Below are positions 21,501 to 58,435 of a stretch of DNA of 64,000 nt, in pieces. Both the position numbers and the translations under genes were made by a program. The notes under the pieces are model-generated. The model worked only from the letters and a program-made list of their open reading frames with translations. It searched no databases and had not been told where the DNA came from. Each line of letters begins with the position of its first letter. The stretch's first letter is position 1. The DNA comes from Ylistrum balloti (lineage: Eukaryota): positions 372,001 to 436,000 of the forward strand of contig NW_026782300.1 in the NCBI RefSeq assembly GCF_031769215.1, read 5' to 3'.

Positions 21501-24500
21501 AGTTGATATCAACAAAAAACATGTTTTAATGTCTGTTGAATTATCAGGATCAATACAGAAATAGTAAAATCAAAAACAGGAGTACACATTCATTGGATCA
21601 TACTCTGTCGTGGAGAAGTTTTTGTCAGGGTATTTGGCATAATTACAGTTTAGATAGTTCTTTTCTTTTATTGATTTTGCTTCTGATTTGTGACTCTACA
21701 TGATCACGATTTTGCCTATGATTTGTGACTCTACATGATCATGATTTTGCCTCTGATTTTTGACTCTACATGATCATGACTTTGCCTCTGATTTGTGACT
21801 CTACATGATCATGATTTTGCCTCTGATTTGTGACTCTACATGATCATGACTTTGCCTACGATTTGTGACTCTACATGATCATGACTTTACCTACGATTTG
21901 TGACTCTACATGATCATGACTTTGCCTCTGATTTGTGACTCTACATGATCATGACTTTGCCTATGATTTGTGACTCTACATGATCATGACTTTGCCTCTG
22001 ATTTGTGACTCTACATGATCATGACTTTGCCTATGATTTGTGACTCTACATGATCATGATTTTGCCTATGATTTGTGACTCTACATGATCATGATTTTGC
22101 CTCTGATTTGTGACTCTACATGATCATGATTTTGCCTCTGATTTGTGACTCTACATGATCATGATTTTGCCTATGATTTGTGACTCTACATGATCATGAC
22201 TTTGCCTACGATTTGTGACTCTACATGATCATGACTTTACCTACGATTTGTGACTCTACATGATCATGACTTTGCCTATGATTTGTGACTCTACATGATC
22301 ATGATTTTGCCTATGATTTGTGACTCTACATGATCATGACTTTGCCTATGATTTGTGACTCTACATGATCATGACTTTGCCTATGATTTGTGACTCTACA
22401 TGATCATGACTTTGCCTATGATTTGTGACGCTACATGATCATGATTTTGCCTCTGATTTGTGACTCTACATGATCATGATTTTGCCTCTGATTTGTGACT
22501 CTACATGATCATGACTTTGCCTCTGATTTGTGACTCTACATGATCATGACTTTGCCTATGATTTGTGACTCTACATGATCATGACTTTGCCTCTGATTTG
22601 TGATTCTACATGATCATGACTTTGCCTATGATTTGTGACTCTACATGATCATGATATTCTACAATTGATGACGGTTGACTATCACATTATAAAACAATTG
22701 AAATTTACAGCAGACCTGAAAAGTCGTGAAGTGAACAATTTCACTCTACCATGCGTCACCAGTTTGATGAATGGTAAATATTTTGGAAACACTCTATTCA
22801 GGTTGTGATAAACTAATAATCAACCATAGATCATTCCAGAACTGATGTCAGATGATAAGTGATTAATTTTGTAGCAATTCCTAGCATTTTCAACAGCATT
22901 AGAGACCCCCTTCTTGTAACATTGACCAAGCAGTGAATTAGGCTCTAATTGTAACAGTGACATAGGAGTGCAGTAAGTTTTTCTTTTAACATTGAGATAA
23001 GAGTGCATTTGGTTCTTTTTGTAACGTTAATCTAGGAGTGCATATAGGTAACCAAGAAAGATCACAGGCATGATGAATTACCACACACACTCAGACACTT
23101 TGTCATGTATAAAAATACATAGAAACATAGACACTAAATTCAATAAAATTATAATCAAGAGCAATATTTCATGTTGGAAAATCACAAAGAAGGACTCAAT
23201 ACTGCTGAAATATATTGGTATACGCTATCTATTTGAGAAATCAATATTAAGATATATACCCGACAATATCCATCAATGTTACTCTGTAAAACATCTATCT
23301 CTTCTTTAGTCCATTGGCCTTGCTTCCAGCTGGCTCCTGTAACATATCATTCAACAGAAGTGTTTATTCTTAAAAGTTATAGTAACATTACTATCACATT
23401 AATGGTGATACATGTATCTTTACTTTGTATGATGAATATTTTTTATGATTTACACAGTTGATGCCTATACTATGAATGATGAAATTTTCGAAGAAGTTTC
23501 GTATTGGCAGCATCTTTACTTTGTACAATGTACTTTTTATAGATCTAAATTGGTAACAGTTTTACTTTGAACAATGAACTTCTTAAAGATTTATCCGTCG
23601 ATTGCCTTACTTTGTATGACGAACTTTTTAATGATTTATATGGGTAAAACATTTACTTTTAATGATGAACTTTTTAATGATTAATACCCATAACACCTTT
23701 ACTTTGAATGATGACCTTTTTTAATGATTAATACCCGTAACAACTTTACTTTGAATGATGAACATTTTTAATGACTTATACGGGTGTCATGTTTACTTTG
23801 AATGATAGACCTCTTTTATGATTTAAACAGGTGATACCTTTACTCTGCATGGCAACCTTGTCAAACCGAGTGGTGAACCATGCCTGTGTTACATCAGAGT
23901 TGCCCGGTGACTTCTTGCCCGTGTTACTTGGTCCCAACAGTTGCTCAGATACTGATGGGGTGGTCGTTACCAAAGGAACAGTTACAGCTGTAGCCATTGC
24001 TGTTGCCACAGGAAGCTGTTGTTCTTCCAGCTGTCAAGTCAAAGGAACATATATCAAACTTGTGCAGCATATATAATAATATTACACAGAATATATACAT
24101 TTAAATACAATCAGTGTTCAAAATTTAGGAAGTGTCCTTACCCATTCTATCATCTAACAATTTCATACTGAATTGTTCCAATTGTGATGCATATTTAGTA
24201 ACGAACTAAAAAATAAAGGACTGGAAAGATACTTGCAGAAGACCAAAAAAAGCCAAACTCAGCTCCCTTTCTCATCAGTTTACATAATTCAACTCTGATT
24301 TGTATTTTATGAGAATAAGAACCAACAATTTGGTTTAATTTTCAGTGAGGCTACCTCAACTGCAGCTGAGGCTTGAATCTTCTGCTGGTCGTCCAGTGTA
24401 ATGTCTGCATTCTCTGCAGTCGTGCTGTCTGCAACAGTCAGGACATATGATTGTCCATCCTCACCCTGGAACCTAAATCGTTTGTTGGCAGGCTCAGTGA

Positions 24501-30300: not shown

Positions 30301-33300
30301 AGAAAGTGACATTAAAAGATCTATACTTGATATGATTATTACTACCGATGAAGGGAAGGTGTGAACGTTTCAAGTACTGTAGTACTGAACAAAGTATTGA
30401 TAGTATTGTATTGAAGTACTTCACCAATCGAATTCCTTAAATTTATGCAACAAGCTCTCTGATTGGCAGAGCCAAGTCTAGATCGATTGTGGGTGGAGCC
30501 AGGTGAAAAAATACTGTGCAGACATCGGCATTTTACAAACACTCGACTGTCGCGAGAGGTTAATTGGAAGAGTCCAAGTCACAGGTGGCTTCAGATCAGA
30601 CCTAATTGGGTTGTCCCATTTGTTTCGTTCTACACCCAATGATACTTTGCTTTTCCATCGATGGTACAACGAGAAAACGAAAGTTACTCAGTACTAAACT
30701 AATTTACGTACAAAATATATATCAACAGGTTAGATCACTGGGACCGGAGAATTCATAACATCTTAACAGTGAATGTAGTCACATAGTCATTCTGTACTAG
30801 TTTTATTTATTTATTTATTTTTTTGAAAGGGGGGAGGGTTGGCTCAAAATATTTCGGTTTAAGCCCAAGCTCTATTATATGTAACAAAGAATTACGAATT
30901 ACCTGGGACCTCCTGATATATGCCGATAATTCATACTGCATTAAAAAATAAAGGAATTCTGTGGTCTCATATATTTTTTATTTTATTTTTTATCTTTCCA
31001 TCGAAAATTATACATATCCGCAACATGTGAAAAAACTTTGAAGTTGGTTGGGCGGAATATCTAGAGCATTTACTACTGCAAGTTCCAGAAATTCTGACAC
31101 AAGTCGGGTATATTTGCCCGAAGCCTCTGTCTCATGACATTGAATACATATTCAGTTACGTTGTATTCCGGGGAATAAGGCGGCTGAAAAACCAGGGACA
31201 CGCCATATTCTTTCAGCATATTTCTTAAAATGCGCTCTCCTGTCTATGGTGATGGAATCCACAATTATCCATCACAACCACATCGCCTTGTACAAAAACA
31301 GGATTCCCCATATCGTTCGTATCGGACATAATTTCGTCCAAGAAAATTTTGCGTACTGTTGTCGTCGTCGGACATTTTTCCAGCGATTACTTAGTACTTG
31401 TTATGTAACTGATAGTGTACATTAACTCCGCCTACCGGAACAAATTGGGTGTCAGATCAACTATTCAGGTTGTCTAAACTCCGCCCCCGACCAATCACAG
31501 AGGTCGTTGTATACTTGACTCGATTATTTGAATACTTCAATACAATAGTATCAATACTTTGTTCAATACTATAGTAAGTGTGTCGTTCACACCTTCCCTT
31601 CATCGGTAGTAATACATTAATATACAAAGTTTCTGATTCATATACGAAAAATGGCCGAGTTATGAAGATGTTACTCTAACAAAAATAACAGCTTGTCACA
31701 TTTTTTTTTTTGCTTTGCGTTTCCTTTTTTAAAATTCTGTTTTTGTTTTTTTTTTTTTTTTTTTTTGTAGTTGTTTTTAGTTTTCAATATTGAGTTAAGA
31801 ACTATTCATATCTCTAGTATTTTTGAATTTCTCAATAAAATTAGTTGTAATTTGATATGTTTGTTTTATAATGATTTCTTTTAATTCATTTCAGAGGTGG
31901 ATGAATATGTAATTAAAGCTCAGATTCTGGCAGGAGGAAGAGGCAAGGGAACATTCTCCAATGGCTTCAAGGGAGGAGTACATTTAACCAAAGAGTAAGT
32001 GTCAGAAATTAAGTAAAACCCACCATTATATATTTCTTATAATGCTTAAATTTTCAGTTATTTGTTCAACATTTCTACTTAAGCAGATATAAGATGTAAG
32101 AAAACAGAAATTACCTGTTTATTATACCATGTAGTGTAAGAAATAAGAAGAGAAGTTTAAATCTAAAACTGGCCTACAGAGAATTATTTTGTTTTCTGAA
32201 TCATATGTATACAACATATTGACAATGGCCTTCTACAAATAGTTCATTTATCATAATCTAAGATTTTATTTGTAATTCAGGTATCCCATCATGCTTAATT
32301 AATATGCATGTGCTTCCTCCCTCATACCATCAGTAACAATTATTGATCAAGGTGACTTTGTCTTACATGTTTGCCCATACCTCTCCTAATATTTCACATT
32401 AGACAATTGGGCATCATTGTGATATTTCTGTTTTCTAGATGTTAAAAGTTTTTTCTTTGAATTTTAGTCCTTCCAAAGTGAAGGGAATTGTTGACAACAT
32501 GCTTGGTCACAAACTGACAACGAAACAGACACATGCTGATGGGGTCAAGGTCAATCAGGTTAGTAATAGCATTGAGATTAACAGTTTAATGCTGATATGA
32601 TATCTTGTTATTTATGAAATTAGCTACATTTGTAGTAGGTTTAACCAGACTGAAAATTTATCAAATATTATGAGTTTTCTACATCAGCAGTTCATGGAAA
32701 AGTATATACCTTCTACCATTCTACATCTGATTTGGAAATTAAACCATGACTGTTTTGATGAAAGCTGGCTTTTCCATTGAAAGGCCATAATAGTGGACCT
32801 AAACCCGTTAAATAAGTAGATAAATAGATAAAACTGTACAACCAGGCCACCTGGTTCAATTTTAAGCTCTGTGGAGATGGAGCCACTTTTCAGAACAAGA
32901 ATCAGTAGGTAAAGTTTATATATCTAAAAAAAATTCTCTGGTTTTATGTCACCTAGGTGATGGGATCAGAATGTCAGGATGTTTCCAAGGATACATTTTA
33001 ATGGAAAATTTTCAAGCTTCTATCACTTAGTTCATGGTCTTTGAATCTGTAGATATTTCCATGGAAACTTAACCAGATTTGTGGTTTCCTGCCTGATGAT
33101 ATCAGAATCTTGGGATATTTCTGAATCACTTAATCATTGTTACATCTGATAGAGATGATTCCAACTTCCGTAATGTAGCATCATAATATTACTTTACTTG
33201 GATGGAGTATAACAAACTTTGTGGTACCAAGACACTTTATTTCCAAAGATAGTTGAATCCACTCTCTGAATTGTGTTGTGTAGGTGATGGTCGCAGAAGC

Positions 33301-36300
33301 TCTGGACATCGCCAAGGAGACCTACTTTGCCATTGTGATGGACCGAGGTTTCAATGGTCCTGTCATGGTGGGTAGTAAACACGGAGGTGTAGACATTGAG
33401 GAGACGGCGGAGAGAGATCCAGATTCAATAATCAAGGTATAGAGTCAGTAACATTAATTGAAACACTAATCAAAGGGATCATTAAAAAGACACTAGTCTA
33501 AAGTTTAAAAATTCATAAAAGGACATGTGTTGTCCTTCTGATCACTAGTAAACATGATCAAATAATTAATGTTGTCACTTGATACTTAAATCCTCAAAAT
33601 CTCCTTAGAGCTATTCCAGTAAAACATCTATTAGATCTCAGGACTCAAAAATACTTTTATATATGGTTCGGTTTCCTGCCTGTTACTTACAAGCAAATTA
33701 TCAGTTGAATTCCATAGGTGGTATACCCCAACATAATCTGGAGTTTTAGAGTGGGATAAATGTTTTGGATTAGCCCTAATATTAACACAATGTTTTCAGA
33801 AAGAATCCATTGCTATTTAAGTCATTCACTGGCTAGGTATACGAAAGAGTGAACTAATTACATCAGTGAGACCTACACTACTATGAAGCAATCATTTGCT
33901 TTTGAAATAATTTCAAGTCTCTGCAATGAAATTAAGTTTGGACTGGGGAACTATGACCCATTAGCCCTAATCTTATGGGTGGGTACATTACAAAATATTT
34001 CAGATAGGCATGTGTTATTGTTAGACAAAGATAAGGTTTTAGATATAACAGACAACATATGATGAAATCTGTATCATCTGAGGAAGGAGACATTGTGACT
34101 AGTGTAACATGAAATCTGTATCATTATTAGGAGGCAGTAGACATTGTGACTGGTATAACATAATATCTGTATCATTGGGGGCAGTAGACATTGTGACTGG
34201 TATAACATGAAATCTGTATCATCTGAGGAAGGAGACATTGTGACTGGTATAACATGATATCTGTATCATTGGAGGCAGTAGACATTGTGACTGGTATAAC
34301 ATGATATCTGTATCATTGGAGGCAGTAGACATTGTGACTGGTATAACATGAAATCTGTATCATTGGAGGCAGTAGACATTGTGACTGGTATAACATGAAA
34401 TCTGTATCATTGGAGGCAGTAGACATTGTGACTGGTATAACATGAAATCTATCATTATTAGGAGGCAGTAGACATTGTGACTGGTATAACATGATATCTG
34501 TATCATTGGAGACAGTAGACATTGTGACTAGTATAACATGAAATCTGTATCATTGGAGGCAGTAGACATTGTGACTGGTATAACATGATATCTGTATCAT
34601 TGGAGGCAGTAGACATTGTGACTGGTATAACAAGAAATCTGTATCATTGGGGGCAGTAGACATTGTGACTGGTATAACATGATATCTGTATCATTGGAGG
34701 CAGTAGACATTGTGACTGGTATAACATGAAATCTGTATCACTGGAGGCAGTAGACATTGTGACTGGTATAACATGAAATCTGTATCATTGGAGGCAGTAG
34801 ACATTGTGACTGGTATAACATGAAATCTGTATCATTGGAGGCAGTAGACATTGTGACTGGTATAACATGAAATCTGTTTCATTATTAGGAGGCAGTAGAC
34901 ATCGTGACTGGTATAACAGAGGAGCAGGCTCTCAGAATGGCAGAAAAGTTAGACTTCACTGGGGAACATCTTCAAGAGGTATGATGTCAAGATAGAAACA
35001 CATTTAGTCAGTGTTATTATTGTGAATCTGTACATAGTTAAACAATGATAAAAACAATAAATAATATTTTACAAAATACAGCTTGCATGCAACATTGTCT
35101 GTATGAAAATGTAAATGTTTCCAGGATGAACACTTATCAATACCAAAACATGAGTCTAACTAAAGAGTCCTTTTAATTAAAGGACAGTAAGGTTAAAATC
35201 ATTGTAGTTCTTTATGTTTTAGTGCATATGATATACTGGTTTCTCTTTGGTAAAGACAGATGTAGGGTTAAGTTTTGTTTTGTTTTGTGTTTTTTACTCT
35301 TAATTTCTTTGGATAGATTTGTTTATCAGAATATTCAAAGCAATGAAAACTTGTAGCTTTCACAATTCTTATCGGTTTATTGCAGGCAGCAACACAAATC
35401 ACTCGTCTCTATAACCTGTTCGTGAAGGTAGACGCCACACAGTTGGAGATCAATCCTTTTGGAGAAACACCAGATGGTAGAGGTAAGTCTATTGATGATT
35501 GGATACACTTTAGAAACTACTTGTGTAGAAATGTCAACATTTTTTCTCTTTTGCTTATTACCTTATTTCCCAGTAAACATTTTCCTTTCATTCTTAATTT
35601 ACAGTGGTCTGCTTTGATGCTAAGTTGAATTTTGATGACAATGCAGCATTCCGACAAAAGGAAATATTTGATATGGAAGACACGAGTGAAACAGATCCTC
35701 GTGAGATAGAAGCAAACAGACTCAAGCTAAACTACATTGGTTTGGATGGTAGCATTGGATGTTTAGGTATATATACATTGTTATAATAGTTTATTTGTTA
35801 TCAACATTTTATCATGGTTAAGTTTGAATAATTTCCACTGGGAAGTTTAGCATTAATTCTGTCCCCACATAGACAACTTTCTTACTATTTTTTCTTTCAT
35901 TAATCAGTCTTGTTTGGTAATTGAAAATCTGAAAGTAAGTAAATCAATTTCCACATACTGTGTGCTATTACCAGCTGATTAAGGGTTTCACTAGCAGAAA
36001 ATGACTTTAGTCCACTTCCAAGCTGTTCTTGTAGGACAGGTGATATTCAGCCAGTTAATGGGTACAAGTGGAAGCTTTCAGAAAGTCATTTAAACTTTCC
36101 TTGAATAGTCGATCATACTTTTATATATTCTACAGTCATGATCTTTAACTTTGATCCAAGTCTGAGGAAATGGGATATTGAAGCAATTTCAATTTAATAA
36201 TTATTTGGATTACCTCCCTTCATCTATCTTTCGTAGTGAATGGAGCTGGTCTTGCTATGGCAACCATGGACATCATCAAACTACATGGCGGAGAACCAGC

Positions 36301-38253
36301 CAACTTTCTGGATGTAGGAGGCGGAGTATCAGAACAGCAAGTTTATGATGCCTTCCAACTTCTTACAGCAGATTCTCATGTAAGTATTGCCAAAATTTCT
36401 ATTAACACATGTGGACAGTCTATAATTGGTCTTCCTCGATACTCCAGAGGTTACAATAACTTTTGCTCTCTGTACCTCCGGATCATGTCATGGCAGAATT
36501 GCAGACATAAGCGAAGCAATTTGATTAGTTCCAAGAGAAAAAATTTGACCAATCACAAGCTGATATTCATCTTTTGAAGATTACAGAGGAGCAACACCCA
36601 TCTTTAAAGCCATTACAATATACTGTTATGAGACATTGAGATTTGTGTCATGTTTATCATAGGAACAAACTGATATTTTTGTCTTGTCCACAAGGTGTTG
36701 CACATTGAAACTTCAGTTTTGCTATGACATATTTCAGGAGTGCAGAGAGCAAAAGTGATTTCAAACCCTGGAGTATTGAGGATAACAACTGATATTCCAG
36801 TGTTTCATTGTCAATTTTAATTTCAGTTTTTTTAATTCTTTTATGTTACGACATCACTTTGTAAGAAACTTTATCAAAAATTTACTTTGAAGAAGCAGAA
36901 ACTTAATTTTCTGAAATCAGGTTAATCACAAAAACCAAGACTAATATGCAATCTACTTCAATGTTAGTCACTATTTTATGAATGAGAAAAGTTAATCATT
37001 AAAAGCCATCCAGATTATCAAATAACGATGTATTTAATGTGAGGATTTTAGTAACAGAAGGAAATATCTTACATTATTTCTAAATATATTTTAATGATTA
37101 TGCTCAAGCATTGAAAAAGAAAGAATTAATTGCAAATTTCAAAACCTCTGTAATAAATTGTATATTTAAAACGTGTATGCTAATACATTCTTATAATATG
37201 AGTTTTTATTTTTTACCTTTTTTAGGTGAAGGGAATTCTTGTCAATGTATTTGGTGGCATTGTAAACTGTGCAACTGTTGCAACGGGTATCCTTAAGGCC
37301 TGTCAGCGTATCAACCTGAAGCTCCCCCTGGTGGTACGACTAGAAGGTAACAAAGATTAGTTAATAGGTCCCATTGCTGTTTGTATACACTGCTGTAACA
37401 TGAAGCTAATAATCAAGTCACTTTTATTTTCTGCTGTAAAAGGAATGGGACCACTTTCTAAAGAAAACTCTTAACTGCGCTGGTAATCAGTCATTTAGTA
37501 GTCTTCAAATGGATTTGTGGTGGGAAGGGTAATAAACACTATGTCCATGTATAATTTGATAGAATCATTCTTGGATATGAGATGATTTTTTTTTCTCTTA
37601 CCCTTGAAAGGTTTATAAACACCTTTTATAGTGTGAGGTTTCTGAGTTTCACTCCAGGATTGAGAAGTGGTCAGGGGGGAGGGATGGGGGTTACCTTTCA
37701 TAACTATGAATTAACATCAACAAAGCAGGGCAACAGCAGATTAAGGCTGGTAGGATAAGAGAAAAATGGTTCTTTGTTTGCTGAATTTTACCCCCTTGTT
37801 GGTAAACCTCGTGTGGAAATAACTAAGTTTCAATCACTCAGCAAGTGTCATGTGTGCCAACTTAGTAATTTCCCCCTTTGGAAAAGATCCCCCTATTTCA
37901 CCCCAAGAGAGAAAGATTTGTTAATCTTAACCTGAAGGGAAGATCTTTTATTTTGAAAACACGAGTTTGAAAATTCACTCACTTTTAAAATGAAAAAAAC
38001 ATGTACATTTCATAAATATGTCAGATTAAACTAGTGTGAAAATCAACTGCTGGTTCCAATGTATACTTATGTGTCAGTGTGTAGTTATTGTAGTGATAAC
38101 TAACAGGGATGTTCTGTATATAATTGTGTTATTTTTTTCCCAGGACAAAATGTAGAAGCAGGAAGAAAAATTTTAGAAGAAAGTAACCTTCCTATAAAAG
38201 CAGCTTTTGGATTTGAGGAAGCAGCAAAGTTGGCAGTAGCCAGTGTGAAGTAG
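27228..38253 (+). CDS. SUCLG2: Succinate--CoA ligase [GDP-forming] subunit beta, mitochondrial; spliced CDS of 11 exons, 431 aa
   Basis: Exons 27228-27311, 29280-29424, 31895-31994, 32468-32558, 33284-33436, 34889-34978, 35386-35482, 35605-35766, 36237-36379, 37226-37346 and 38144-38253. All are GT-AG with consistent phases, total 1296 nt. Arg/Ser-rich targeting peptide. Motifs [52 protein letters not shown] and GIVNCA are of the GTP-specific type. Confidence 0.96.
29280..29424 (+). CDS. SUCLG2: SUCLG2 exon 2
   Basis: [32 protein letters not shown]...AAEKL. Confidence 0.93.
30342..31609 (-). mobile_element. Internally deleted Tc1/mariner-IS630 superfamily DNA transposon in SUCLG2 intron 2
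   Basis: Terminal inverted repeats CTACCGATGAAGGGAAGGTGTGAACG are perfect for 26 bp, with 13 mismatches over the first 89 bp. TA flanks both ends. A transposase remnant lies on the minus strand. Confidence 0.88.
31008..31375 (-). pseudogene. Frameshifted DDE transposase fragment (IS630/Tc1/mariner type)
   Basis: [20 protein letters not shown] / [32 protein letters not shown] / [26 protein letters not shown], with two frameshifts. The second D and the E are about 37-38 residues apart. Confidence 0.85.
31895..31994 (+). CDS. SUCLG2: SUCLG2 exon 3
   Basis: [33 protein letters not shown]. Confidence 0.95.
32468..32558 (+). CDS. SUCLG2: SUCLG2 exon 4
   Basis: [31 protein letters not shown]. Confidence 0.95.
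33284..33436 (+). CDS. SUCLG2: SUCLG2 exon 5
   Basis: [40 protein letters not shown]...DSIIK. Confidence 0.95.
34062..34918 (+). repeat. 47-bp minisatellite, 18 copies, built from the SUCLG2 intron 5/exon 6 junction
   Basis: Unit ATGAAATCTGTATCATTGGAGGCAGTAGACATTGTGACTGGTATAAC; the last copy is the real acceptor plus the first 10 codons of exon 6. Confidence 0.97.
34889..34978 (+). CDS. SUCLG2: SUCLG2 exon 6
   Basis: attattag|[30 protein letters not shown]|gtatga; the first 30 nt are the last unit of the 47-bp array. Confidence 0.92.
35386..35482 (+). CDS. SUCLG2: SUCLG2 exon 7
   Basis: [32 protein letters not shown]. Confidence 0.95.
35605..35766 (+). CDS. SUCLG2: SUCLG2 exon 8
   Basis: [22 protein letters not shown]...[11 protein letters not shown]. 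Confidence 0.95.
36237..36379 (+). CDS. SUCLG2: SUCLG2 exon 9
   Basis: [30 protein letters not shown]...LLTADSH. Confidence 0.95.
37226..37346 (+). CDS. SUCLG2: SUCLG2 exon 10
   Basis: [26 protein letters not shown]...LPLVVRLE. Confidence 0.95.
38144..38253 (+). CDS. SUCLG2: SUCLG2 exon 11 (last)
   Basis: [36 protein letters not shown]; stop TAG at 38251-38253. Confidence 0.95.
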
Positions 38254-39239
38254 AATGTATGAGATTTTGTACAGTGGGTTTTCAGGTATGTCTGTTGCAA
38301 CATGGTACAGGACTGATGAAAATCATTTGAATTTTTGCCATCAAATTCAGTTTAGAGTTTTTGAGGTTTTTTCCTCTTTAAAAAAATTGGATTCAGAATA
38401 ATAACAAATAAGAACAATAAAAAATTATTGCATTTTATTGAAATAGATCTTACAAATTTTTATGTTTAAGTTTTGTTTTTTTGGCATTTTCAGATATATT
38501 TGCAGTAACAGACACATAGATGTTTAGAAAATATGGTTTAGCCAGGGTTTTATCCATTGGTATGTAGTTGAATAATCGGTTTTGTCAATGATTTGCACAC
38601 TGAATGTGATCTTTTAAATGATGTACATTGTACAAGGTTTAGAAGGCAGCAAATGTAAATTATATCTGGGAAATACTATGTATAACAGTATAAAATTGTT
38701 TTTTAAGTGATACTGTAAATCCATTTTGGAAGTGATAATTATATTTCAACATTTTAATTGCCAATTATGTAAGTGCTGAAGTATTATAATTACTTGATAA
38801 CAAAAAGCATGTATCATTGTGTTCTAGATAGCTGCAGCACCAAGTCATGATTTGTGTTATCAAAACATTTTCACTAATAGGTTAAAATTTGAGTGTTAAA
38901 GTACATCCATTTTTATAGGTAATCAGTGTCATCTTTTCATAAAATTTAGGACTATGTTCTTAAAATAGCAGATTTCTGTTTTTGTGATTTGACCACCATC
39001 TCCTGGATGGAAAAACAAGAAGACTTTTTTTAATACTGCCATATTTTTTGTTAGTGTGTTGCATAAGCAAATTCTGAGTCATGCTACGTAGAAATTCCAA
39101 TATGTCATCTTTTAACATTTTCTTCTACCATTAAGCCATCAATCAGGAATGGTAAAGATTGTTGTCATGGAAAAAAAGCATGTTCAGCATTTTGTCACAT
39201 CAATGGATTACTATCTAAATGGTATATTGACCATCAGAA

Positions 39240-39440
39240 ACAATGACATCATGAAACAATGAGATTAGATAATAATGACAACGTTAAAAAAATACACCAG
39301 AGAATAATGACATCATGAAACAAAGATGTCAGAAAATGATGACATCATTAAACAAGACATCTGAAAATGATGACATCATCAAACAAAGATATCAGACAAA
39401 GGTTACATCATGAAGGGATGACTCCAGGAAATGATAGCAT
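39240..39440. repeat. Degenerate ~32-bp tandem repeat, about 6 units, downstream of the SUCLG2 stop
   Basis: ATGACATCAT at 39243, 39307, 39339 and 39370, with diverged units at about 39276 and 39402. Confidence 0.75.
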
Positions 39441-42010: not shown

Positions 42011-42688
42011 TTTATGCTGTACTGGGGTGACCTTTATAACATATTTATGCTCTACTGGGGTGATCTTTATAACATATTTATGCTAATAAATATTTATGCT
42101 ATACTGGGGTGATCTTTATAACATATTTATGCTATACTGGGATGACTTTTATAACTGGGGTGACCTTTATAACATATTTATGCTAATAACATATTTATGC
42201 TATACTAGGGTGACCTTTATAACATATTTATGCTATACTAGGGTGATCTTTATAACATATTTATGCTATACTAGGGTGACCTTTATAACATATTTATGCT
42301 GTACTGGGGTGACCTTTATAACATATTTATGCTATACTAGGGTGACATTTATAACATATTTATGCTATACTAGGGTGATCTTTATAACATATTTATGCTG
42401 TACCTTTATAACATATTTATGCTATAGGGTGACCTTTGACATATTTAACATATTTATGCTATTTATGCTATACTGGGGTGACCTTTATAACATATTTATG
42501 CTTTACTAGGGTGATCTTTATAACATATCTATGCTATACTGGGACTGGGGTGACCTTTATAACATATTTATGCCATACTGGGGTGACCTTTATAACATAT
42601 TTATGCTGTACTGGGGTGACCTTTATAACATATTTATGCTGTACTGGGGTGACCTTTATAACATATTTATGCCATACCGGGATGACCT
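42011..42688. repeat. 33-bp minisatellite, about 20 irregular copies
   Basis: Unit TTTATAACATATTTATGCTATACT(G/A)GGGTGACC; it explains the repetitive ORFs at 42096-42792. Confidence 0.95.
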
Positions 42689-45600
42689 TGATAGACAGAG
42701 CTTTTATGTACACAGATTTAGTCTATACCTGCTTTGCTATACATGAGTTATATTATAGAGAGGATTTGCTTTACACAGATGTCTTTTATTAACATGATTT
42801 TGTTATACACAGGTGACCAGAATAGACAGGTACATCCTATGCAGTTTTTGCCTTGACTTACAGGTATTCTCTCTAGTGACTGGCATGGGTTGGACAGGTG
42901 TTATTATTTTCATTACAGAGGTGTTCTTTGTCGACAGGGATTTGATTCTAGAACATTTACAGGAACCAAATGGGTAAATATGATGATTTATGTAAAAGGA
43001 TAAATACATATGTGCCAATCAGACAGAATGTGTTTTAGTTTTCATTTCCTTGGATTGTTTAATTGTCATCTAAAATGACATGGGAGTTAACAGACTTTAC
43101 TTAAGTTATCAGAAGACAGTTCTTCCTAAGAACTAATAGTCTTTTTCAGAGATTTGATCACTTATGAATTCCTTAAGTTTGAAATTGGTCATGTGTTTCT
43201 CTGAAACACTGTATTAAATTAATGATACTCAGTTGGTGAGCATCATTGTGATTTGTATATGACATAATTTGAGATGAAAATGATAGCATTTTTGTTTTCA
43301 ATAAGCACTGGTATCTCTATTACAGTATGTTTTACTGAGATCATTATTCTTATTTCATCAATAAATAAGTAAATAAACGGATAAACAAAATAATATAAGT
43401 TGTCAAAGTGGAAACATTTTGCGCATTTTTTGCTCAAATAGCATGGTATCCTCACCAATTATAATAATTAGCTGTTTGTCAGCCTTTCTTGATTCAAAAA
43501 GGTGATTGAATGATCGGTACTTCCCATATATAATCATTTATCAGAAAATCGATTTGTTTCATTGTTAGAATGTTATTTCTGTAGGGCCAGAAGAGTGCAT
43601 GTCTATGAACTTTTTAAATTGTCCCATACTTCAATTAGAAAAGTTTCCGGGACTACTTTAATTTACTTAAGTGTTATTCACGAAATCAAAATGTTCTTCA
43701 GCAGTGGAAAGCTTAGACTATCCTCGTGTCATGTTTTTGAAAATTGTTTTAAAGTGACTTAAGAAATTGGATATACCCCTTCATTGTTTTTTTTATGAGA
43801 TGGATCATTCTAGCTTGACAAACAGTTATAATATTCAACAATACCGTCAGTTTATTCCTTTTTTCTCTCCTCAGTATCGTTTAAATTAGACTTTTAATAA
43901 GGGACAAACACGCCTTAAGGGATATAAATTTAAGGTAAAACGATACCATGAAGTCAAAACGGTCAAAGCCAGACGTTTGAACTCTGGAATTTATAGATAT
44001 TTAAAGTTGAAGGTAAATAGATAAAGTGATAGGTCTGTTGAAGAGGTGTGAACTGTTTGATTCCAGTTGAAGTGACACTAGCATAAAAGCCCCCTGCAAT
44101 GAACAGTATCGAGTCTCTACAAACTAATTTGTTGTCACCTTGGTGTAAGCGAGACAAATGGATATCGTCTAAACCCCGTTAGGGCAGTGCCTGGTAAGGT
44201 TATTTCGTACGTTCACCGATATCTGTGTTTTCAAGTTCAACACGGAACAAGATACAAATCTGCGAAAATGTTTAGTCATAAATAACATGACATACGAAAA
44301 CGTTATGTGTGTGTGGGTGTGTACATTTTATTATTTTAAAACTGAACTAATTATCGAAATTATAACTTTCAAATCACACTTTGGTTTCAATAATTTTATA
44401 TTAATTAACAGTTGTTAGGGGATAATCATAGGTAGTACCACGGAAAACACCATTGCCATCTCCAAAATATTTGCATCGCGTCTTAAAATCGTCAAAAGAG
44501 TAGAGACCGGAGAAAAGGTTTCATTGAAGGCAAGTTTTGTTTTAAGGTCGTGTCAAGTTGTAATATCAGACATGTCAACTAAACCACCCACTATCAAAAG
44601 ATTACAGGATATGATCAGAGTGTCAATCAGATGATGTACATTTAGGTGTGGAGATAATGAATATTTGTTTTTAACAACTTCAGTGCTGTTTTTTTTCATT
44701 TATCGTGATTATGGATAAGTTCGTAGCTTTACAAATCAGGCTTAATATTTCATTTGAGATGATATCGCAAGATAACAACAACAGATCGTATAAATTATGT
44801 TCTAATTAATTAACCGGATCTTTATAAGTACTCATGTTGTGGTTATAGGCCTAACAGTCACTTCGTTAATGTAGGGAGTCAATCCATTAACGATGAACTG
44901 CTGACATTGGCAGGTTATGATCAAAACATCCGGTTATCCTGTCTTTTTTCCTTAATACATGTACTACCATTACATGGTGGCTTCGCAACGCTGCACAAGT
45001 ACCCGCTGACATATGAATGAATTGGTCACGCACGAGCAATTAAGACGAAAACAATGACTTGGGTGATGGTTAAAGATGAAGATTGCCAGGTCTGTAGGGA
45101 CAAGTCCGTATTCATATAATTTCACGGAATTAATCATAAAATAATGGATTTTTTTGTTTCGCATCACGATGTCGGGTCCATCACAAATTACATCGTGAAT
45201 GTAGTAATTGGTTTGGTTTCTTGTTTAAATAATCATCATTGAATGGGTTAAAGGGAAGGGAAGGTTGGACGGAAGGACGGGAGTGGCCTTGCATTGCCCA
45301 GAACGCAAAAGTAAGTACAATGCGATCAGAATGTGCAGGCAGAGGAGGAAAATAAAAAGAAATTTGTGTGTCAATGCCAGGTAGCAGATGGTAATCAGTT
45401 TGTGTTCGAGCAGAATAGAGAAGTTGAGAAAGGCGCCAGTAAACCTGGCAGTAGGCTTTAAATTATATATGCTATACCACTTATTAATAATATGAAAAAT
45501 AAAGCATGAGTATTATTTTCAAATGTAAACCATACAGACAGAACCTGTTCACAACAGCTGGATGTATCGATCGCTTTGCTTCTGCAAAATGAATATTGTA

Positions 45601-47145: not shown

Positions 47146-47700
47146 TCACCGAAACGACGTCCCCACCATAGAATTACCTATTCACCGAAACGACGTCCCC
47201 ACCATAGAAATACCAATTCACCGAAACGACGTGCCCGCCATAGAATTACCTATTCACTAAAACTACTTCCCCACCATAGAAATACCTATTCACCGAAACG
47301 ACGTCCCCGCCATAGAAATTCCTATTCACCGAAACTACGTTCCCGCCATAGAATTACCTATTCACCGAAACGACATGCCCGCCATAGAATTACCTATTCA
47401 CTAAAACTACGTTCCCGCCATAGAATTACCTATTCACCGAAACGACGTGCCCGCCATAGAACTACCTATTCACCGAAACGACGTGCCCGTCATAGAATTA
47501 CCTATTCACTAAAACTACGTCCCAGCCATAGAATTACCTATTCACTAAAACGACGTTCCCGCCATAGAAATACCTATTCACTAAAACTACGTCCCCGCCA
47601 TAGAATTATCTATTCACTAAAACTACGTTCTCGCCATAGAAAAACCTATTCACTAAAACTACGTCCCCACTATAGAATGACCAATTCGCCAAATACGACG
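47146..47700. repeat. 35-36-bp CpG-rich minisatellite, about 15 copies
   Basis: Unit CCC(G/A)CCATAGAATTACCTATTCAC(C/T)(G/A)AAAC(G/T)ACGT(C/T). Confidence 0.95.
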
Positions 47701-48217
47701 TTCCTAACATTAACGAAAACCATGCTCCCGACGTAGTATGACCCATTTACTGAAAACCGTATTCCCGTTAGAGATTGACCCATTCATCAGAAAAGACGTC
47801 GCCATTCCTAAAGTTACCAAATCATTAAACGACGTTTCAGCTATAAATTAACACATTCGTTAAAAACGGTGGTTCGGCTATTTATAGTATCATATTCATC
47901 AAAACGGCATTCTTGCCATAGAATGATATATACCATATATCCACACATAAGATCTGCCTTCTGTTACCGAACCAGGATTTTGAGAATTTGGTGTGAAAAA
48001 TGAATAAAAAGTGTAATATATATAAAAGGCACACAATGTTTATATCACGTTCATTAGAAAGTGATAACAATGAAAATATCTTTAATCCCTGAAATATTTG
48101 ATAAATACCAAGTTTTCAATCAATTCTAGCTATTATTTTCATTGATTCGGCATCAGATAGTTACACAATGAATTGTTTGAGCTCGACTATGTATGATAAA
48201 GGTTGACATGACATGTC

Positions 48218-50685: not shown

Positions 50686-52183
50686 GAGCCTTACTTATTT
50701 AGTCAATGCAAAGTTGTTTAAATGATGAAATGCGTTGGCTTTTTTCCTTCAGGAATTCTGACTTTACCTAAGACCAACATTTCTAGTTAAGATTACTCCT
50801 GCCAAAGTAAGTTTTAAACTTTACATTTGCTGAAGTTAATTAGAGATCCAATCGCAAAATGGTCTGTTAATTGCCCTAAGAGAACAAAATTAAACCCCAG
50901 AAATATTGACCTTAGTGTTGTAATATGATTCGAAACCTTCATGAAGCGCTTGATTCATTTCAGGGACATACAGGCAGAAGACCTGTCGAACAGCTGGGGA
51001 TATGGCTAGCGGCACGCTAATTTGCAGTGCTTATCAGCTGTTATGTAGACTAGGATAAATATTGAAACGTTAACCGAGTCACTCGATTAAATCCGCGATT
51101 GTCTGTTGATTTTCAATCAGTTTGGAAGACTAGACAGTCATTAATGAGATTTGTCTGAAACCAAACTTCTCTAGACAGCTGTTTCTGGTATCTGATTGGT
51201 ACTTGTATCAATATCTAGTACACACACCAAATCCACAATGACGGGGTAGCGTTTTAAATTTAAGCTCCCGAATCAAAGGTCCAAGATAGATAATTTTTCA
51301 TTTTACTAGAACTTTTTCATCCTCAACAGCAACTCTTGATATGTCATCCATAATATAACCTTGTTTAGACAATTAAAACTGATAATCTGCCGTTTACTTT
51401 TGATGTGAAGTTTTGAATATTGTCATTTATTGACAAACGGGTTTAGTATTGAAGAGACTAAGCAAAGCATCTACTGGAGTTCAGACCAAGAAAATTAATT
51501 TCTGTATCTACCGCAATATGTATGAAACAATCGGCCATACACAAGCTAAGGTTATATGCCACCTGTGACGAATGTTATTGTTTCATAAATTTCATAAGTC
51601 GATCCACATTTGAAGGACAATGAACATGATTTGAATCACTTTTGACAAAAATCATTCTTTAAAACGACAAATATTTGGAAATTTGGTCAGAAATACAACT
51701 AGAACATTCGGCGCAGATATTATAATAACGTCTTTACAGAAAATTTCTTCATTACATTTTCCTTGAAATCCCTATTTAGAATACATATTCTATCGAACAA
51801 TTGAACAAGATATGATCAAAATATATGTGAAAATAATATCACAGATAATTATGTATAATGGAGATTTTACGTCGTTTGCCGGAAATTAAGTATTTTGTCT
51901 CAAAGCTACAGGTAAAAACACCGGTATATAATTAATGTTAGTTGTCTGTTATTCAAAGGTAAAGTAAGAGATTAATAATCAGTCAACAGAAGAAGGCTGT
52001 GTAAGACACATTAATTTTGTAACATTATACATACATGCTGAAGGAAGCTGAATGATAACTATTCAATAACGAGATTGTTTTTTCTATAGCATAACTAATG
52101 TTACGTCCAACTATTTATCATCTGATGACGCTGTGTGCTTGCAGAAGCGGTCGACAGATTCGTAATAAAATCGTTTCATTTGT

Positions 52184-53035
52184 TTATTGATTAGTTTCAC
52201 TGTTTATTGATTGTTTTCAACTGTTTATTGATTATATCTGTTTATCGATTGGTTTCATCTGTTTATTGATTGGTTTCATCGGTTTATTGATTGGTGTCAT
52301 CTGTTTATTGATTGGTTTCATCGGTTTATTGATTGGTGTCATCTGTTTATTGATTGGTTTCATCTGTTTATTGTTTAGATTTATCTATTTATTGATTGGT
52401 TTCATCTGTTTATTAATTGGTTTCATCTGTTTATTGATTGGTGTCATCTGTTTATTGATTGGTTTCATCTGTTTATTGATTGGTGTCATCTGTTTATTGA
52501 TTGGTTTCATCTGTTTATTGTTTAGATTTATCTATTTATTGATTGGTTTCATCTGTTTATTAATTGGTTTCATCTGTTTATTGTTTAGATTTATCTATTT
52601 ATTGATTGGTTTCATCTGTTTATTGATTGGTTTCATTTGTTTATTGATTGGTTTCATCTGTTTATTGATTGGTTTCATCTGTTTGTTGATTGGTTTCATC
52701 TATTTATTGATTGGTGTCATCTGTTTATTGATTGGTTTCATCTGTTTATTGTTTAGATTTATCTATTTATTGATTGGTTTCATCTGTTTATTAATTGGTT
52801 TCATCTGTTTATTGTTTAGATTTATCTATTTATTGATTGGTTTCATCTGTTTATTGATTGGTTTCATCTGTTTATTGATTGGTTTCATCTGTTTATTGAT
52901 TGGTTTCATTTCTTTATTGATTAGATTTATCTATTTATTGACGTTATTTGTTTATTGATTAGCTTCAGCTGCTTATTGATTCGAATGATTTGTTGATTGA
53001 TTGGTTTCATCTGTATATAGATTGGTTTCGTATGT
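52184..53035. repeat. 21-bp minisatellite, about 40 copies, with higher-order variants
   Basis: Unit ATTGATTGGTTTCATCTGTTT; variant ATTGTTTAGATTTATCTATTT at 52370, 52517, 52580, 52748 and 52811. Confidence 0.97.
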
Positions 53036-54689
53036 TTATCTAAAGGTTGGTAAGCAAATAAGCAAGTATCATGCAATCTATATTAGGTATATGCTCAATT
53101 TTTACAGTAAATCACAAAACATCTCTCATTATCTCTTTATAATTCCAATGTATCCCCTCAAGAGCATGGAATGAAAGAAATCACTTTTTCAGCTCATATT
53201 TCCTACTTTTATTACAACAGTTACTGTCACTTCAATAACCTCATTACCACACTGTATTACATCTACATCATCGTATCACAATTTGTGTACGTATTTAATG
53301 AGCCCGAGTAATACTGTAACAACAATTATCTCATTTCCATCACACTGTATACCATACATCAGCTGTTATATCGACCAACCCCCTACTAAGCTGTATGAAA
53401 ATTGGCCCGTTATAGCAAGGTCTCAACATTCTACCAAACAGTATGAAACATGACGACTGAAATTTCTCGATTATTTACTTTCTTTCCACTAGTAATAACC
53501 ACCTGAATTTTATACGTAGCTCTTTTCAAAAGTGTTCTAGCAAGAAGTGTGTTCTAGTTAAATAAATGGCGTACACTGGATGTTACACCTGAGTTACTTA
53601 ACATAATCATTTTATCAAATTATGTTAATCTTGATGACTTGCTTTCTAATTAAGAAGATTTTTCCTACTTTGAATTAGTATTCGAATATATATCACCTAT
53701 CTTGTCTTCAACACTACCTATGTTCAGTTACCAGATTTATCAGAGATATGCTTTACGTTTGCATACTTGTTCGTTACAAACATCCCACAGATGGATTTGT
53801 ATTTTACATTTGCCACTCATGGTGAAGAAGTGATTGTCACTTACATCGGTAGTCACCCATATATCTTTAAAAGGATGTTTTGTGAAAACGTATCTAAAGA
53901 GGATGTTTAAAGTGATATCTGCATTCATTTCATATAAGAGTATGAAAAAAATTAAGAAAGACAGAACAGAAAAAGAATTGTTCGTCATTTTTCTATGGGA
54001 CTAATTTTGTTTTCCATGTCATTTTACCATCGGATCTAGTTCACAGAAATTGTTGGTTATACTCTTGTATATTAAAGTAACTGTGAATAGGATCGTGAAA
54101 GAAAATACATATCATTTTTAAGTACCATCTTCACTGTGTTTTAACAAAACTGCCTTGCCCCATGTGGGTCGTTATTGGTATGGAGTGACATGTTTTGTCA
54201 ATACCGAGAGTGGCCTCCGAGAGTCGACCAATTGACAGCTCTATTGACATTGAACATTAATGCCAACATATCAAGTATTATATGTTTGCCCATACTGAAG
54301 AGAATCAAAAATAACAATTTGATTTTAATGTCAGAATATGTCCACCCACACCCTGGGTGAGCTAGAGATATATCGATGTGTAAATCTGTGACAACATGAG
54401 AAATTGATCCCAACTTCAACAAGGAGATGTTAAAATCGGCAGGAGGAGAAATTTAATGGCATTCTGGTATTTCAAAATTCACCAGAATTAATATTGGTAA
54501 TAGCGCAAGTAATCATGATTGAAAATATCAGTTAGAAAAATCTTGAATATTGTTTTCTTAGTTTCCCAAACAGTGGAGAAGACACAAACGCTTTCACTTA
54601 TTATATACTTATATATATAAATATTCTGATAAAGGAATACGAAGGTTTTCCTGTCTCTGTTAATATACTTATAAAATCTACCTGTGGAC

Positions 54690-58130: not shown

Positions 58131-58435
58131 CCGCCCACATTCATATTTGGAAACGTTTCGAGATTGGATACGCAGGTCTACCACACTACACACAAGTTTG
58201 GTATATTTTGAGATTTGATACCCAGGTCAACCACACTACACACAAATTTGGTACATTTTGAGATTTGATACCCAGGTTAACCACACTACACACAAATTTG
58301 GTACATTTTGAGATTTGATACCCAGGTTAACCACACTACACACAAATTTGGTACATTTTGAGATTTGGTACCCATTCATATCCCACCGCACAAGGTGACA
58401 TATCCCACCACACAAGGTGACATATCCCACCACAC
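58131..58435. repeat. 50-bp tandem repeat (4 conserved + 1 diverged unit) followed by a short ~21-bp duplication
   Basis: CCACACTACACACAA at 58181, 58231, 58281 and 58331; CACAAGGTGACATATCCCAC twice after 58385. Confidence 0.93.

What the first reader, a model, noticed from the sequence alone, without database searches (positions are those of the whole stretch)
34062..34978. The SUCLG2 exon-6 splice acceptor and first 10 codons have been amplified into an 18-copy minisatellite of mostly splice-dead decoys
Seen: the real junction unit is 21 intronic nt (TGAAATCTGTTTCATTATTAG) plus 30 exonic nt ([10 protein letters not shown]), and 17 copies of it lie directly upstream. In 13 copies a 4-nt deletion (CATTATTAG|GAG to CATTG|GAG) removes the acceptor AG. 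Two copies carry another variant. Two copies keep an intact ATTATTAG|GAG (AG at 34129-34130 and 34460-34461), and both read [10 protein letters not shown] then TAA or TGA in frame. Only the functional copy has TTTC instead of TATC in the pyrimidine tract. Inference: (i) the variant that spread is the one that cannot compete for splicing, which suggests selection on array content; (ii) the two intact copies are potential poison acceptors that would trigger NMD; (iii) the real branch point must lie in exon-derived sequence of the neighbouring copy (GTGAC at -33 or ATAAC at -24), so every unit carries one. Array length or content could therefore tune expression of a TCA-cycle enzyme. Caveat: each unit also has internal CAG/TAG dinucleotides.
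Basis: partly seen in the sequence, partly recalled or inferred. Interest (0 to 1): 0.8.

Follow-up and report, generated by a model that had tools for sequence, protein, structure and literature searches.

The report
Splice-acceptor minisatellite in scallop SUCLG2 intron
An intron of a scallop citric-acid-cycle gene ends in 17 extra tandem copies of its own splice acceptor plus the first 30 bases of the next exon; this repeat type ("mirage" minisatellite) is already known and is most likely a tolerated by-product, not a proven expression dial.

Summary
A 47-nt x 18 array lies at 34062-34918, and its last copy is the true intron 5/exon 6 junction of a GTP-type succinyl-CoA ligase beta gene. 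Thirteen copies lack ATTA and so the acceptor AG. Two copies carry a GAG variant, and two keep the intact acceptor and run into a stop after 10 codons.

DNA contigs of four other individuals enter the array from both sides, so it is not an assembly artefact. Their repeat words are 7-9 times single-copy depth, which suggests a variable array. Three related animals have the same intron position but no array, so it is a young, lineage-specific insertion.

It fits the known "mirage" minisatellite (amphioxus Adh3 and globin genes; human F7 intron 7). Earlier notes of this scan report many such arrays elsewhere in this genome, including acceptor-side ones.

"Splice-dead" is overstated, because every unit keeps a GAG/CAG/TAG cluster and a branch-point-like motif. 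Nothing here supports selection on array content or expression tuning. No RNA data were available. The branch-point inference holds under AG-scanning logic.

Verdict: a real new member of a known kind, of modest interest.

The parts
33284..33436 (+). SUCLG2 exon 5 (51 codons); donor GT at 33437
   Evidence: tblastn with E. coli SucC. Boundaries read. Orthologous ORF fragments all stop at the same donor.
33437..34888 (+). Intron 5, 1452 nt, of which about 805 nt is the array. Without the array it would be about 650 nt.
   Evidence: The same intron is 415, 234 and 651 nt in three related animals.
34063..34867 (+). Seventeen non-functional tandem copies of the junction unit (the 'mirage' array proper)
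   Evidence: TRF; unit alignment. Nine units fall into two sets of identical copies: 7, 8, 11, 16, 17 and 5, 6, 12, 14.
34063..34109 (+). Unit 1, the V variant (CATCTGAG|GAAGGA). It keeps an AG, but with G at -3. Unit 4 (34208-34254) is the same type.
34110..34160 (+). Unit 2: intact decoy acceptor (AG at 34129-34130). The reading from 34131 gives 10 codons and then TAA.
   Evidence: Pyrimidines at -20..-4 are 9/17, against 10/17 for the real site.
34443..34491 (+). Unit 9: intact decoy acceptor (AG at 34460-34461), with GT lost from the tract. The reading from 34462 gives 10 codons and then TGA.
   Evidence: No contig of four other individuals lay on the 101-nt depth bin (34414-34514) that contains it. 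That is a hole, not proof of absence.
34848..34886 (+). AG-free zone upstream of the real acceptor, with branch-point candidates GTGAC (A34856, -32) and ATAAC (A34865, -23)
   Evidence: The logic of AG exclusion zones comes from PMC1431707. The branch point itself is not mapped.
34868..34918 (+). Unit 18: the authentic junction (21 nt of intron plus the first 30 nt of exon 6), with private T34878 (TTTC) and C34903 (ATC)
   Evidence: Contigs of three other individuals cover it with no listed difference.
34889..34978 (+). SUCLG2 exon 6 (30 codons, phase 0/0)
   Evidence: It is 73% identical in protein to the exon in L002.
35386..35482 (+). SUCLG2 exon 7, used to type the gene as GDP-forming

Best explanation
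This is an acceptor-side 'mirage' minisatellite. A 51-bp segment spanning the intron 5/exon 6 boundary of a scallop SUCLG2 gene was duplicated in tandem and then amplified by slippage or unequal exchange, to 17 extra copies upstream of the authentic junction. The array became homogenised around a 47-bp variant that had lost ATTA, including the A of the acceptor AG. As is usual, the boundary copy, which is the real junction, stayed outside this homogenisation.

The array is most likely a tolerated, selectively near-neutral by-product of a genome that makes minisatellites very readily.

Inferred mechanism of correct splicing:
- The real acceptor is the only copy continuous with the rest of exon 6 and with its donor 90 nt downstream, which favours it under exon definition.
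- It has the best, though still weak, pyrimidine tract and a UAG|G.
- Its branch point is supplied by a TNAY motif in the exon-derived part of the neighbouring unit.
- Thirteen units lack the homologous AG, and two have a poor GAG.
- The two intact copies lie 758 and 427 nt upstream. Using them would define 848- and 517-nt exons that end in a premature stop, so any such transcripts would probably be lost to NMD.

Shown here: the structure, the direction of copying, its presence in other individuals and its absence from relatives. Inferred: the origin mechanism, the silence of the copies, the branch point and NMD.
For: - Structure and census.
- Direction of copying: the exon start is conserved to bacteria, mammals and three related animals that lack the array (and TRF).
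- Real in the population: in four DNA runs from two studies the left-flank contig runs into unit 1. In three of them a right-flank contig starts in unit 17 or 18. Repeat words lie at 4-9 times single-copy depth.
- Young or homogenised: nine units fall into two sets of identical copies, and the real copy has two private differences. PMC3087553 describes the same pattern of 'exclusion of cluster boundaries from homogenization' for an amphioxus acceptor-side mirage.
- The genome makes minisatellites readily: about eight separate arrays in this 64-kb window, one of them a donor-side junction array in the neighbouring gene.
- Precedent that such arrays leave splicing undisturbed: amphioxus Adh3, globin, TnC and PGBD5 and human F7.
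- No RNA structure that would hide the copies is needed or seen (z = +2.0).
Against: - No RNA data could be obtained, so the silence of the copies is assumed from precedent in other species.
- The two intact copies differ from the real acceptor by only one tract pyrimidine (9/17 against 10/17). They are transcribed first and have their own branch-like motif, so measurable cryptic use cannot be excluded.
- The real acceptor shares the lowest pyrimidine count among the nine acceptors of this gene that were scored (exon 7's was not), so competition could matter.
- The dominant variant happens to be the one without the AG, and all copies carry a tract-weakening T>A. Both fit some purifying selection against live copies.
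Confidence: 0.68

Rival explanations
1. Content shaped by purifying selection, without a regulatory role. Live copies of the acceptor upstream of the real one are harmful, because they give premature-stop transcripts. The array could therefore grow only after its founder unit had a weakened tract (T>A) and then lost the AG (ATTA deletion). The intact units 2 and 9 are rare relics, tolerated because they lie far from the exon.
For: - All 17 copies carry the tract T>A, and 13 lack the AG.
- TTTCATT, as in the real copy, also stands at the acceptor of relative L002. This hints that TTTC is ancestral.
- The last eight units before the exon are all AG-less.
- No contig of four other individuals lay on unit 9's private sequence. 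In all four, unit 1 is followed by another V unit and not by intact unit 2.
Against: - It rests on a single historical event.
- By my rough arithmetic, 2 of 3 near-fixed differences falling in the roughly 16 of 51 nt that carry the acceptor signal has a chance probability of about 0.2.
- Every AG-less unit still has CAG and TAG close by.
- Two intact copies in the first nine units has a probability of about 0.26 by chance.
- Holes in contig coverage prove nothing.
- Earlier scan notes report acceptor arrays of about 60 copies in this genome, two of them first read as in-frame acceptor copies. I did not check these, and how many of those copies keep the AG is not stated.
Confidence: 0.2
2. One reading: the array is a cis-regulatory VNTR. 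Branch-point and acceptor decoys, plus two poison acceptors coupled to NMD, set the output of SUCLG2. Array length or content would then tune expression and be under selection.
For: - The copies carry branch-like motifs and AG clusters.
- The real acceptor is weak.
- Array content appears to differ between individuals. TGATATC-type units are at 7-9 copies by depth against 3-4 in the window, and a V-V junction is seen in the other individuals but not in the window.
Against: - No expression or junction data exist here.
- The array is absent from three related animals with the same intron.
- Its units are nearly identical, so it is young.
- Published mirages do not disturb splicing.
- Minisatellites are frequent here, so an array on a junction is expected now and then. 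By my arithmetic the chance is about 7% for a random 51-nt seed in this gene.
Confidence: 0.08
3. Assembly artefact: the array, or its size, was created by mis-assembly of reads.
For: The exact order and number of units in the window were not checked with long reads. No contig spans the array.
Against: - Independent short-read contigs from two studies reproduce the left array-flank junction in four individuals and the right one in three of them.
- They also hold array words at several times single-copy depth.
Confidence: 0.02

Closest known systems
Amphioxus 'mirage' minisatellites, in particular globin BflGb6 (3' end of intron B12.2 plus the 5' part of exon 2); also Adh3, TnC and PGBD5 (PMC3087553, PMC3902484)
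   Same: - A tandem array whose unit spans an intron-exon boundary of the host gene, with the authentic junction at one end.
- BflGb6 is acceptor-side, as here.
- Many but not all copies keep the AG.
- Concerted evolution inside the array, with the boundary copy excluded.
- Length differs between haplotypes.
   Different: - A different phylum (mollusc).
- A shorter unit (47-51 nt against 150-160 nt in BflGb6) and more copies (17 against 3-6).
- Most copies lost the AG through one shared 4-nt deletion.
- Normal splicing is shown by RT-PCR in amphioxus but is untested here.
Human F7 intron 7 37-bp VNTR (PMC1557585)
   Same: The first element of the minisatellite spans the exon-intron boundary. 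The authentic site is therefore accompanied by identical pseudo-sites that normally stay silent. The array is polymorphic in length.
   Different: It is donor-side. The authentic site is the most upstream one and wins by 5'-to-3' scanning. Here the authentic acceptor is the most downstream copy and is transcribed last, so that rule cannot explain the choice.
Human IFI6 (6-16) minisatellite providing multiple splice donor sites (Turri et al. 1995). I know this paper from memory; only its title phrase was seen, in papers that hold it.
   Same: A minisatellite that overlaps a splice junction and multiplies a splice site.
   Different: It is donor-side with a 12-nt, in-frame unit. The extra sites are used and give protein isoforms. 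Here the unit is out of frame and any use leads to a stop.
Other junction minisatellites of this same genome noted by this scan (USP5, LRRC20, lectin, FAM135A and SK on the acceptor side; many on the donor side)
   Same: The same genome and the same architecture, according to unchecked AI notes. I confirmed one donor-side case by eye in this window (23418-23851, minus strand).
   Different: In this array most copies have lost the homologous AG. The notes describe several of the other arrays as tandem copies of the acceptor itself.

Membership tests
'Mirage' minisatellite (tandem duplication of an intron-exon boundary) | Head-to-tail tandem array of minisatellite-size units | tested here: met
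   Period 47, 18.0 copies, 92% matches
'Mirage' minisatellite (tandem duplication of an intron-exon boundary) | The unit contains both intronic and exonic sequence of the host gene, and one terminal copy is the authentic junction | tested here: met
   Unit 18 is 21 nt of intron plus the first 30 nt of exon 6. The exon part is conserved in SUCLG2 of mammals and of three related animals.
'Mirage' minisatellite (tandem duplication of an intron-exon boundary) | Derived from the gene's own junction, not an older repeat that became an exon | tested here: met
   Relatives have the same exon start and intron position without any array. There are no dispersed copies in the window.
'Mirage' minisatellite (tandem duplication of an intron-exon boundary) | Concerted evolution within the array, with the boundary copy excluded | tested here: met
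   Two sets of identical units. The real copy has two private bases, against 17 copies that agree with each other.
'Mirage' minisatellite (tandem duplication of an intron-exon boundary) | Length or content instability between haplotypes or individuals | tested here: inconclusive
   Depth of TGATATC-type unit words is 7-9 times single copy in X3 and X5, against 3-4 copies in the window. A V-V unit junction is seen in all four runs but not in the window. These are contigs only, and no read spans the array.
'Mirage' minisatellite (tandem duplication of an intron-exon boundary) | Regular splicing is not disturbed, and the copies are absent from the mRNA | not testable with these tools
Regulatory decoy or poison splice-site element coupled to NMD | The decoy sites are used in transcripts, and use rises under an NMD block | not testable with these tools
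   No RNA data
Regulatory decoy or poison splice-site element coupled to NMD | Conservation of the element across species | tested here: not met
   Absent in L002, L005 and L006. These relatives are distant (80-84% protein identity in exon 5), and close pectinids could not be fetched.
Succinyl-CoA ligase beta subunit, GDP-forming (SUCLG2) | Closer to GDP-forming than to ADP-forming chains | tested here: met
   Exon 7 scores 47.1 bits to 6wcv_B (GDP-forming) and 24.1 bits to 6g4q_B (ADP-forming). Exon 8 barely discriminates (66.4 against 63.6 bits). Exon 5 fragments carry PF08442. No tree was built.

The most novel reading that the evidence does not exclude
The array is a functional, polymorphic splicing rheostat. 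Branch-point and acceptor decoys, together with one or two live poison acceptors, divert a length-dependent share of SUCLG2 pre-mRNA into NMD. The AG-less unit type spread because selection favoured arrays that titrate without killing the gene. Acceptor-side mirages would then be a general source of expression variation in scallops.
Probability: 0.06. Interest if true: 0.6.

Novelty: new member of a known kind. Interest (0 to 1): 0.25.

Why it matters
As it stands, this is one more well-documented example of a splice-junction ("mirage") minisatellite, now in a mollusc housekeeping gene and on the rarer acceptor side.

Its modest value is as a natural experiment on 3' splice-site choice. Seventeen near-copies of a weak acceptor sit upstream of the real one, each with a branch-like motif. 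Two are fully intact, and the rest differ by one defined 4-nt deletion. The rule that explains the donor-side F7 case (the most upstream site wins) cannot apply, because here the real site is the last one transcribed.

RNA-seq and long reads from a few scallops would show whether exon definition alone protects the gene, and whether such arrays leak into NMD. If they do leak in a length-dependent way, these arrays would be a common source of expression variation in this genome.

Tried and rejected
- RNA evidence: the single run search (kind 'any', 32400-36500) returned only DNA-like contig runs, so no junction could be tested.
- Own-species protein fragments: the exon 5 ORF of the window is not on record. 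The word search gave no hit above 84% identity, so neither close pectinid relatives nor transcript fragments across the exon 5-6 junction could be fetched.
- Older decayed copies of the junction in the upstream intron: the best local alignment is a 10-mer, reached by 49 of 300 shuffles. I therefore dismissed a 9-nt TATAACAGA match between the upstream flank and the exon as chance.
- Dispersed copies of the unit in the window: none.
- Coding potential of the array on either strand: only periodic ORFs of 69 aa or less.
- RNA structure that could hide the copies: the array folds worse than shuffles (z = +2.0).
- Polarising the private ATC/ATT difference with outgroups: they use ATA, ATT and ATC, so it is uninformative.
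- The joint 33645>35087 seen in two DNA runs has only 23 letters on its shorter side. It sits in a short stretch with raised depth and many loose ends, so I read it as a dispersed repeat, not a deletion allele.
- Mollusc literature: a search for minisatellite plus exon-intron boundary plus bivalve gave one irrelevant paper.
- No proper splice-site model (e.g. MaxEnt) was available, so only simple descriptors were used.
- The organism name (Ylistrum balloti) comes from earlier scan notes and was not verified here.

Full report
**Observation**

The stretch was read directly. Tandem Repeats Finder reports a single array at 34062-34918 with period 47, 18.0 copies, 92% matches and score 1435. I cut it into units and aligned them.
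- Units 1 and 4 carry a CATCTGAGGAAGGA variant.
- Unit 2 (51 nt) and unit 9 (49 nt, two bases lost from the tract) keep ATTATTAG|GAG, with AGs at 34129-34130 and 34460-34461.
- Thirteen units read CATTGG, having lost ATTA and with it the A of the AG.
- Unit 18 (34868-34918) is the real junction.

All 17 upstream copies share TATC and GACATT, whereas the real copy has TTTC and GACATC. Both intact copies read ten codons ([10 protein letters not shown]) and then TAA or TGA. A 31-nt unit core occurs 16 times in the window against 0 expected, and only inside the array.

**The gene**

tblastn with E. coli SucC (taken from locus L001) lays out the exons of a succinyl-CoA ligase beta gene on the + strand between about 29.3 and 38.3 kb.
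- Exon 5 is 33284-33436.
- Exon 6 is 34889-34978 (90 nt, phase 0 at both ends).
- Exon 7 is 35386-35482.

Exon 7 scores 47 bits to GDP-forming (SUCLG2) chains and 24 bits to ADP-forming chains. Exon 8 hardly discriminates. "SUCLG2 exon 6" is therefore a fair label if one presequence exon lies upstream; I did not map that exon.

**Direction of copying and age**

Exon 6 aligns from its first residue to pig and human SUCLG2 and to SucC. An exon 5 word search returned only genomic ORF fragments that all stop at the same donor. The contigs of three of them (L002, L005, L006; 80-84% protein identity in exon 5) also hold exon 6. In those contigs:
- the intron position and the exon start (GA[GA] CC[AT] GTG GAC AT.) are the same;
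- intron 5 is 415, 234 and 651 nt;
- there is no junction array.

So the exon sequence is ancestral. The array is a derived insertion of about 805 nt into an intron that would otherwise be about 650 nt. Nine units fall into two sets of identical copies, so the array is young or strongly homogenised. No older decayed copies lie in the upstream intron.

**Is it real in the animal?**

No RNA run holds the stretch. Five DNA-like contig runs from two studies do. I laid four of them on 33000-36000.
- In every run a single-copy contig (depth 9-17) runs from the left flank to 34098, inside unit 1.
- In three runs a contig starts at 34854 or 34873 and runs through the real junction and exon 6 with no listed difference.
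- Short contigs of array words have depths of 59-134 where single copy is about 15.

This rules out an assembly artefact. The words of TGATATC-type units are 7-9 times single-copy depth in X3 and X5, while the window holds 3-4 copies of them. All four runs also hold a contig in which unit 1 is followed by another V-type unit, not by intact unit 2. Nothing lay on the two 101-nt depth bins at 34414-34615, which hold units 9 and 10 with their private variants. Together this suggests that array length and content vary between individuals. Contigs cannot prove absence, however, and none spans the array.

**What kind of thing it is**

Notes of earlier agents of this scan name the genome as the saucer scallop Ylistrum balloti. 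They also pointed me to the term "mirage". I checked the literature myself.
- It describes an acceptor-side case in globin BflGb6 (3' end of an intron plus the 5' part of exon 2).
- It notes that many but not all copies keep AG/GT, that RT-PCR shows regular splicing, that haplotypes differ in copy number, and that boundary copies are excluded from homogenisation.
- PMC3902484 adds TnC and PGBD5 and repeats that these arrays do not generate aberrant mRNAs.
- PMC1557585 shows that in human F7 intron 7 the pseudo-donors of a junction-spanning VNTR are functional but silent, because the most upstream donor is taken.

The array here meets every structural criterion of a mirage that I could test. 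The same notes list many donor-side and five acceptor-side arrays elsewhere in this genome. Those are leads I could not check. I did confirm by eye one decayed donor-side array in the neighbouring gene of this window (23418-23851, minus strand).

The window holds about eight separate minisatellite arrays. By my arithmetic, a random 51-nt seed in this 9-kb, roughly 20-junction gene would straddle a junction about 7% of the time. An array on a junction is therefore not surprising in itself.

(i) "Splice-dead decoys and selection on content."
- The homologous AG is indeed gone in 13 units, and the two V units have a poor GAG.
- Every AG-less unit nevertheless keeps GAG, CAG and TAG within 2-10 nt, behind the same tract (7-9 of 17 pyrimidines) and behind its own TNAY motif. 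They are weakened, not dead.
- The spread of one variant is what unequal exchange does to any array.
- Of the three differences between the dominant unit and the real one, two fall in the acceptor signal. By my rough arithmetic that has a chance probability of about 0.2.
- I rate weak purifying selection against live copies as possible (0.2) but unproven.

(ii) "Poison acceptors."
- Units 2 and 9 are complete: a branch-like motif in the preceding unit, a tract only one pyrimidine poorer than the real one (9/17 against 10/17), UAG|G, and a stop after ten codons.
- The real acceptor shares the lowest pyrimidine count among the nine acceptors scored in this gene.
- Some use is therefore plausible, but it would create 848- and 517-nt exons, and there are no RNA data.

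(iii) "Branch point in exon-derived sequence."
- The AG-free zone upstream of the real AG is 39 nt (34848-34886).
- Under the scanning rule (PMC1431707) the branch point should lie there.
- The only TNAY motifs at a workable distance are A34856 and A34865, both in the exon-derived part of unit 17.
- This inference is sound, though the branch point is unmapped.

**Most likely mechanism**

The array arose by tandem duplication and slippage or unequal exchange and is tolerated. The real acceptor wins because of its context: continuity with the purine-rich remainder of exon 6, a donor 90 nt away, the best tract, and UAG|G. No special RNA structure is involved, since the array folds worse than shuffles. 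Rare use of copy sites would give premature-stop transcripts. One point of interest is that the F7 rule (the upstream site wins) cannot explain an acceptor-side array, where the authentic site is transcribed last.

**Verdict**

This is a new member of a known kind, and this scan has already noted several others on other DNA of the same genome. Regulatory tuning remains an untested possibility of low probability.

Noticed in passing
window 23418-23851 (minus strand): A decayed 47-nt x 9 array (70% matches). It is a donor-side junction minisatellite in the same window.
   Followed up: partly
window 21672-22654, 42086-42693, 47146-47701, 52173-53039, 58156-58374, 39232-39414: The window is unusually rich in minisatellites: 35x28, 33x18, 36x15, 21x42, 50x4 and 32x6 (unit length x copies). 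I did not check whether any of these also abuts an exon.
   Followed up: no
window 33599-33666 and about 35087-35109: Short stretches in introns 5 and 6 with raised contig depth (up to 78 against about 15) and many loose ends in all four DNA runs. Two runs also show a 23-letter joint 33645>35087. This looks like a short dispersed repeat, not a deletion allele.
   Followed up: no
window 33000-36000: The four other individuals differ from the window at about 1.1-1.4% of intron positions (12-15 letters in 1.1 kb), mostly at shared sites. Exon 6 and the real junction show no listed difference in the three runs that cover them.
   Followed up: partly
window 34062-34108: All four DNA runs hold a 77-nt contig in which the first (V-type, AGTGTAACA) unit is followed by a second V-type unit, not by the intact unit 2 of the window. 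The 5' end of the array is arranged differently in those individuals.
   Followed up: partly
I did not examine them.
   Followed up: no
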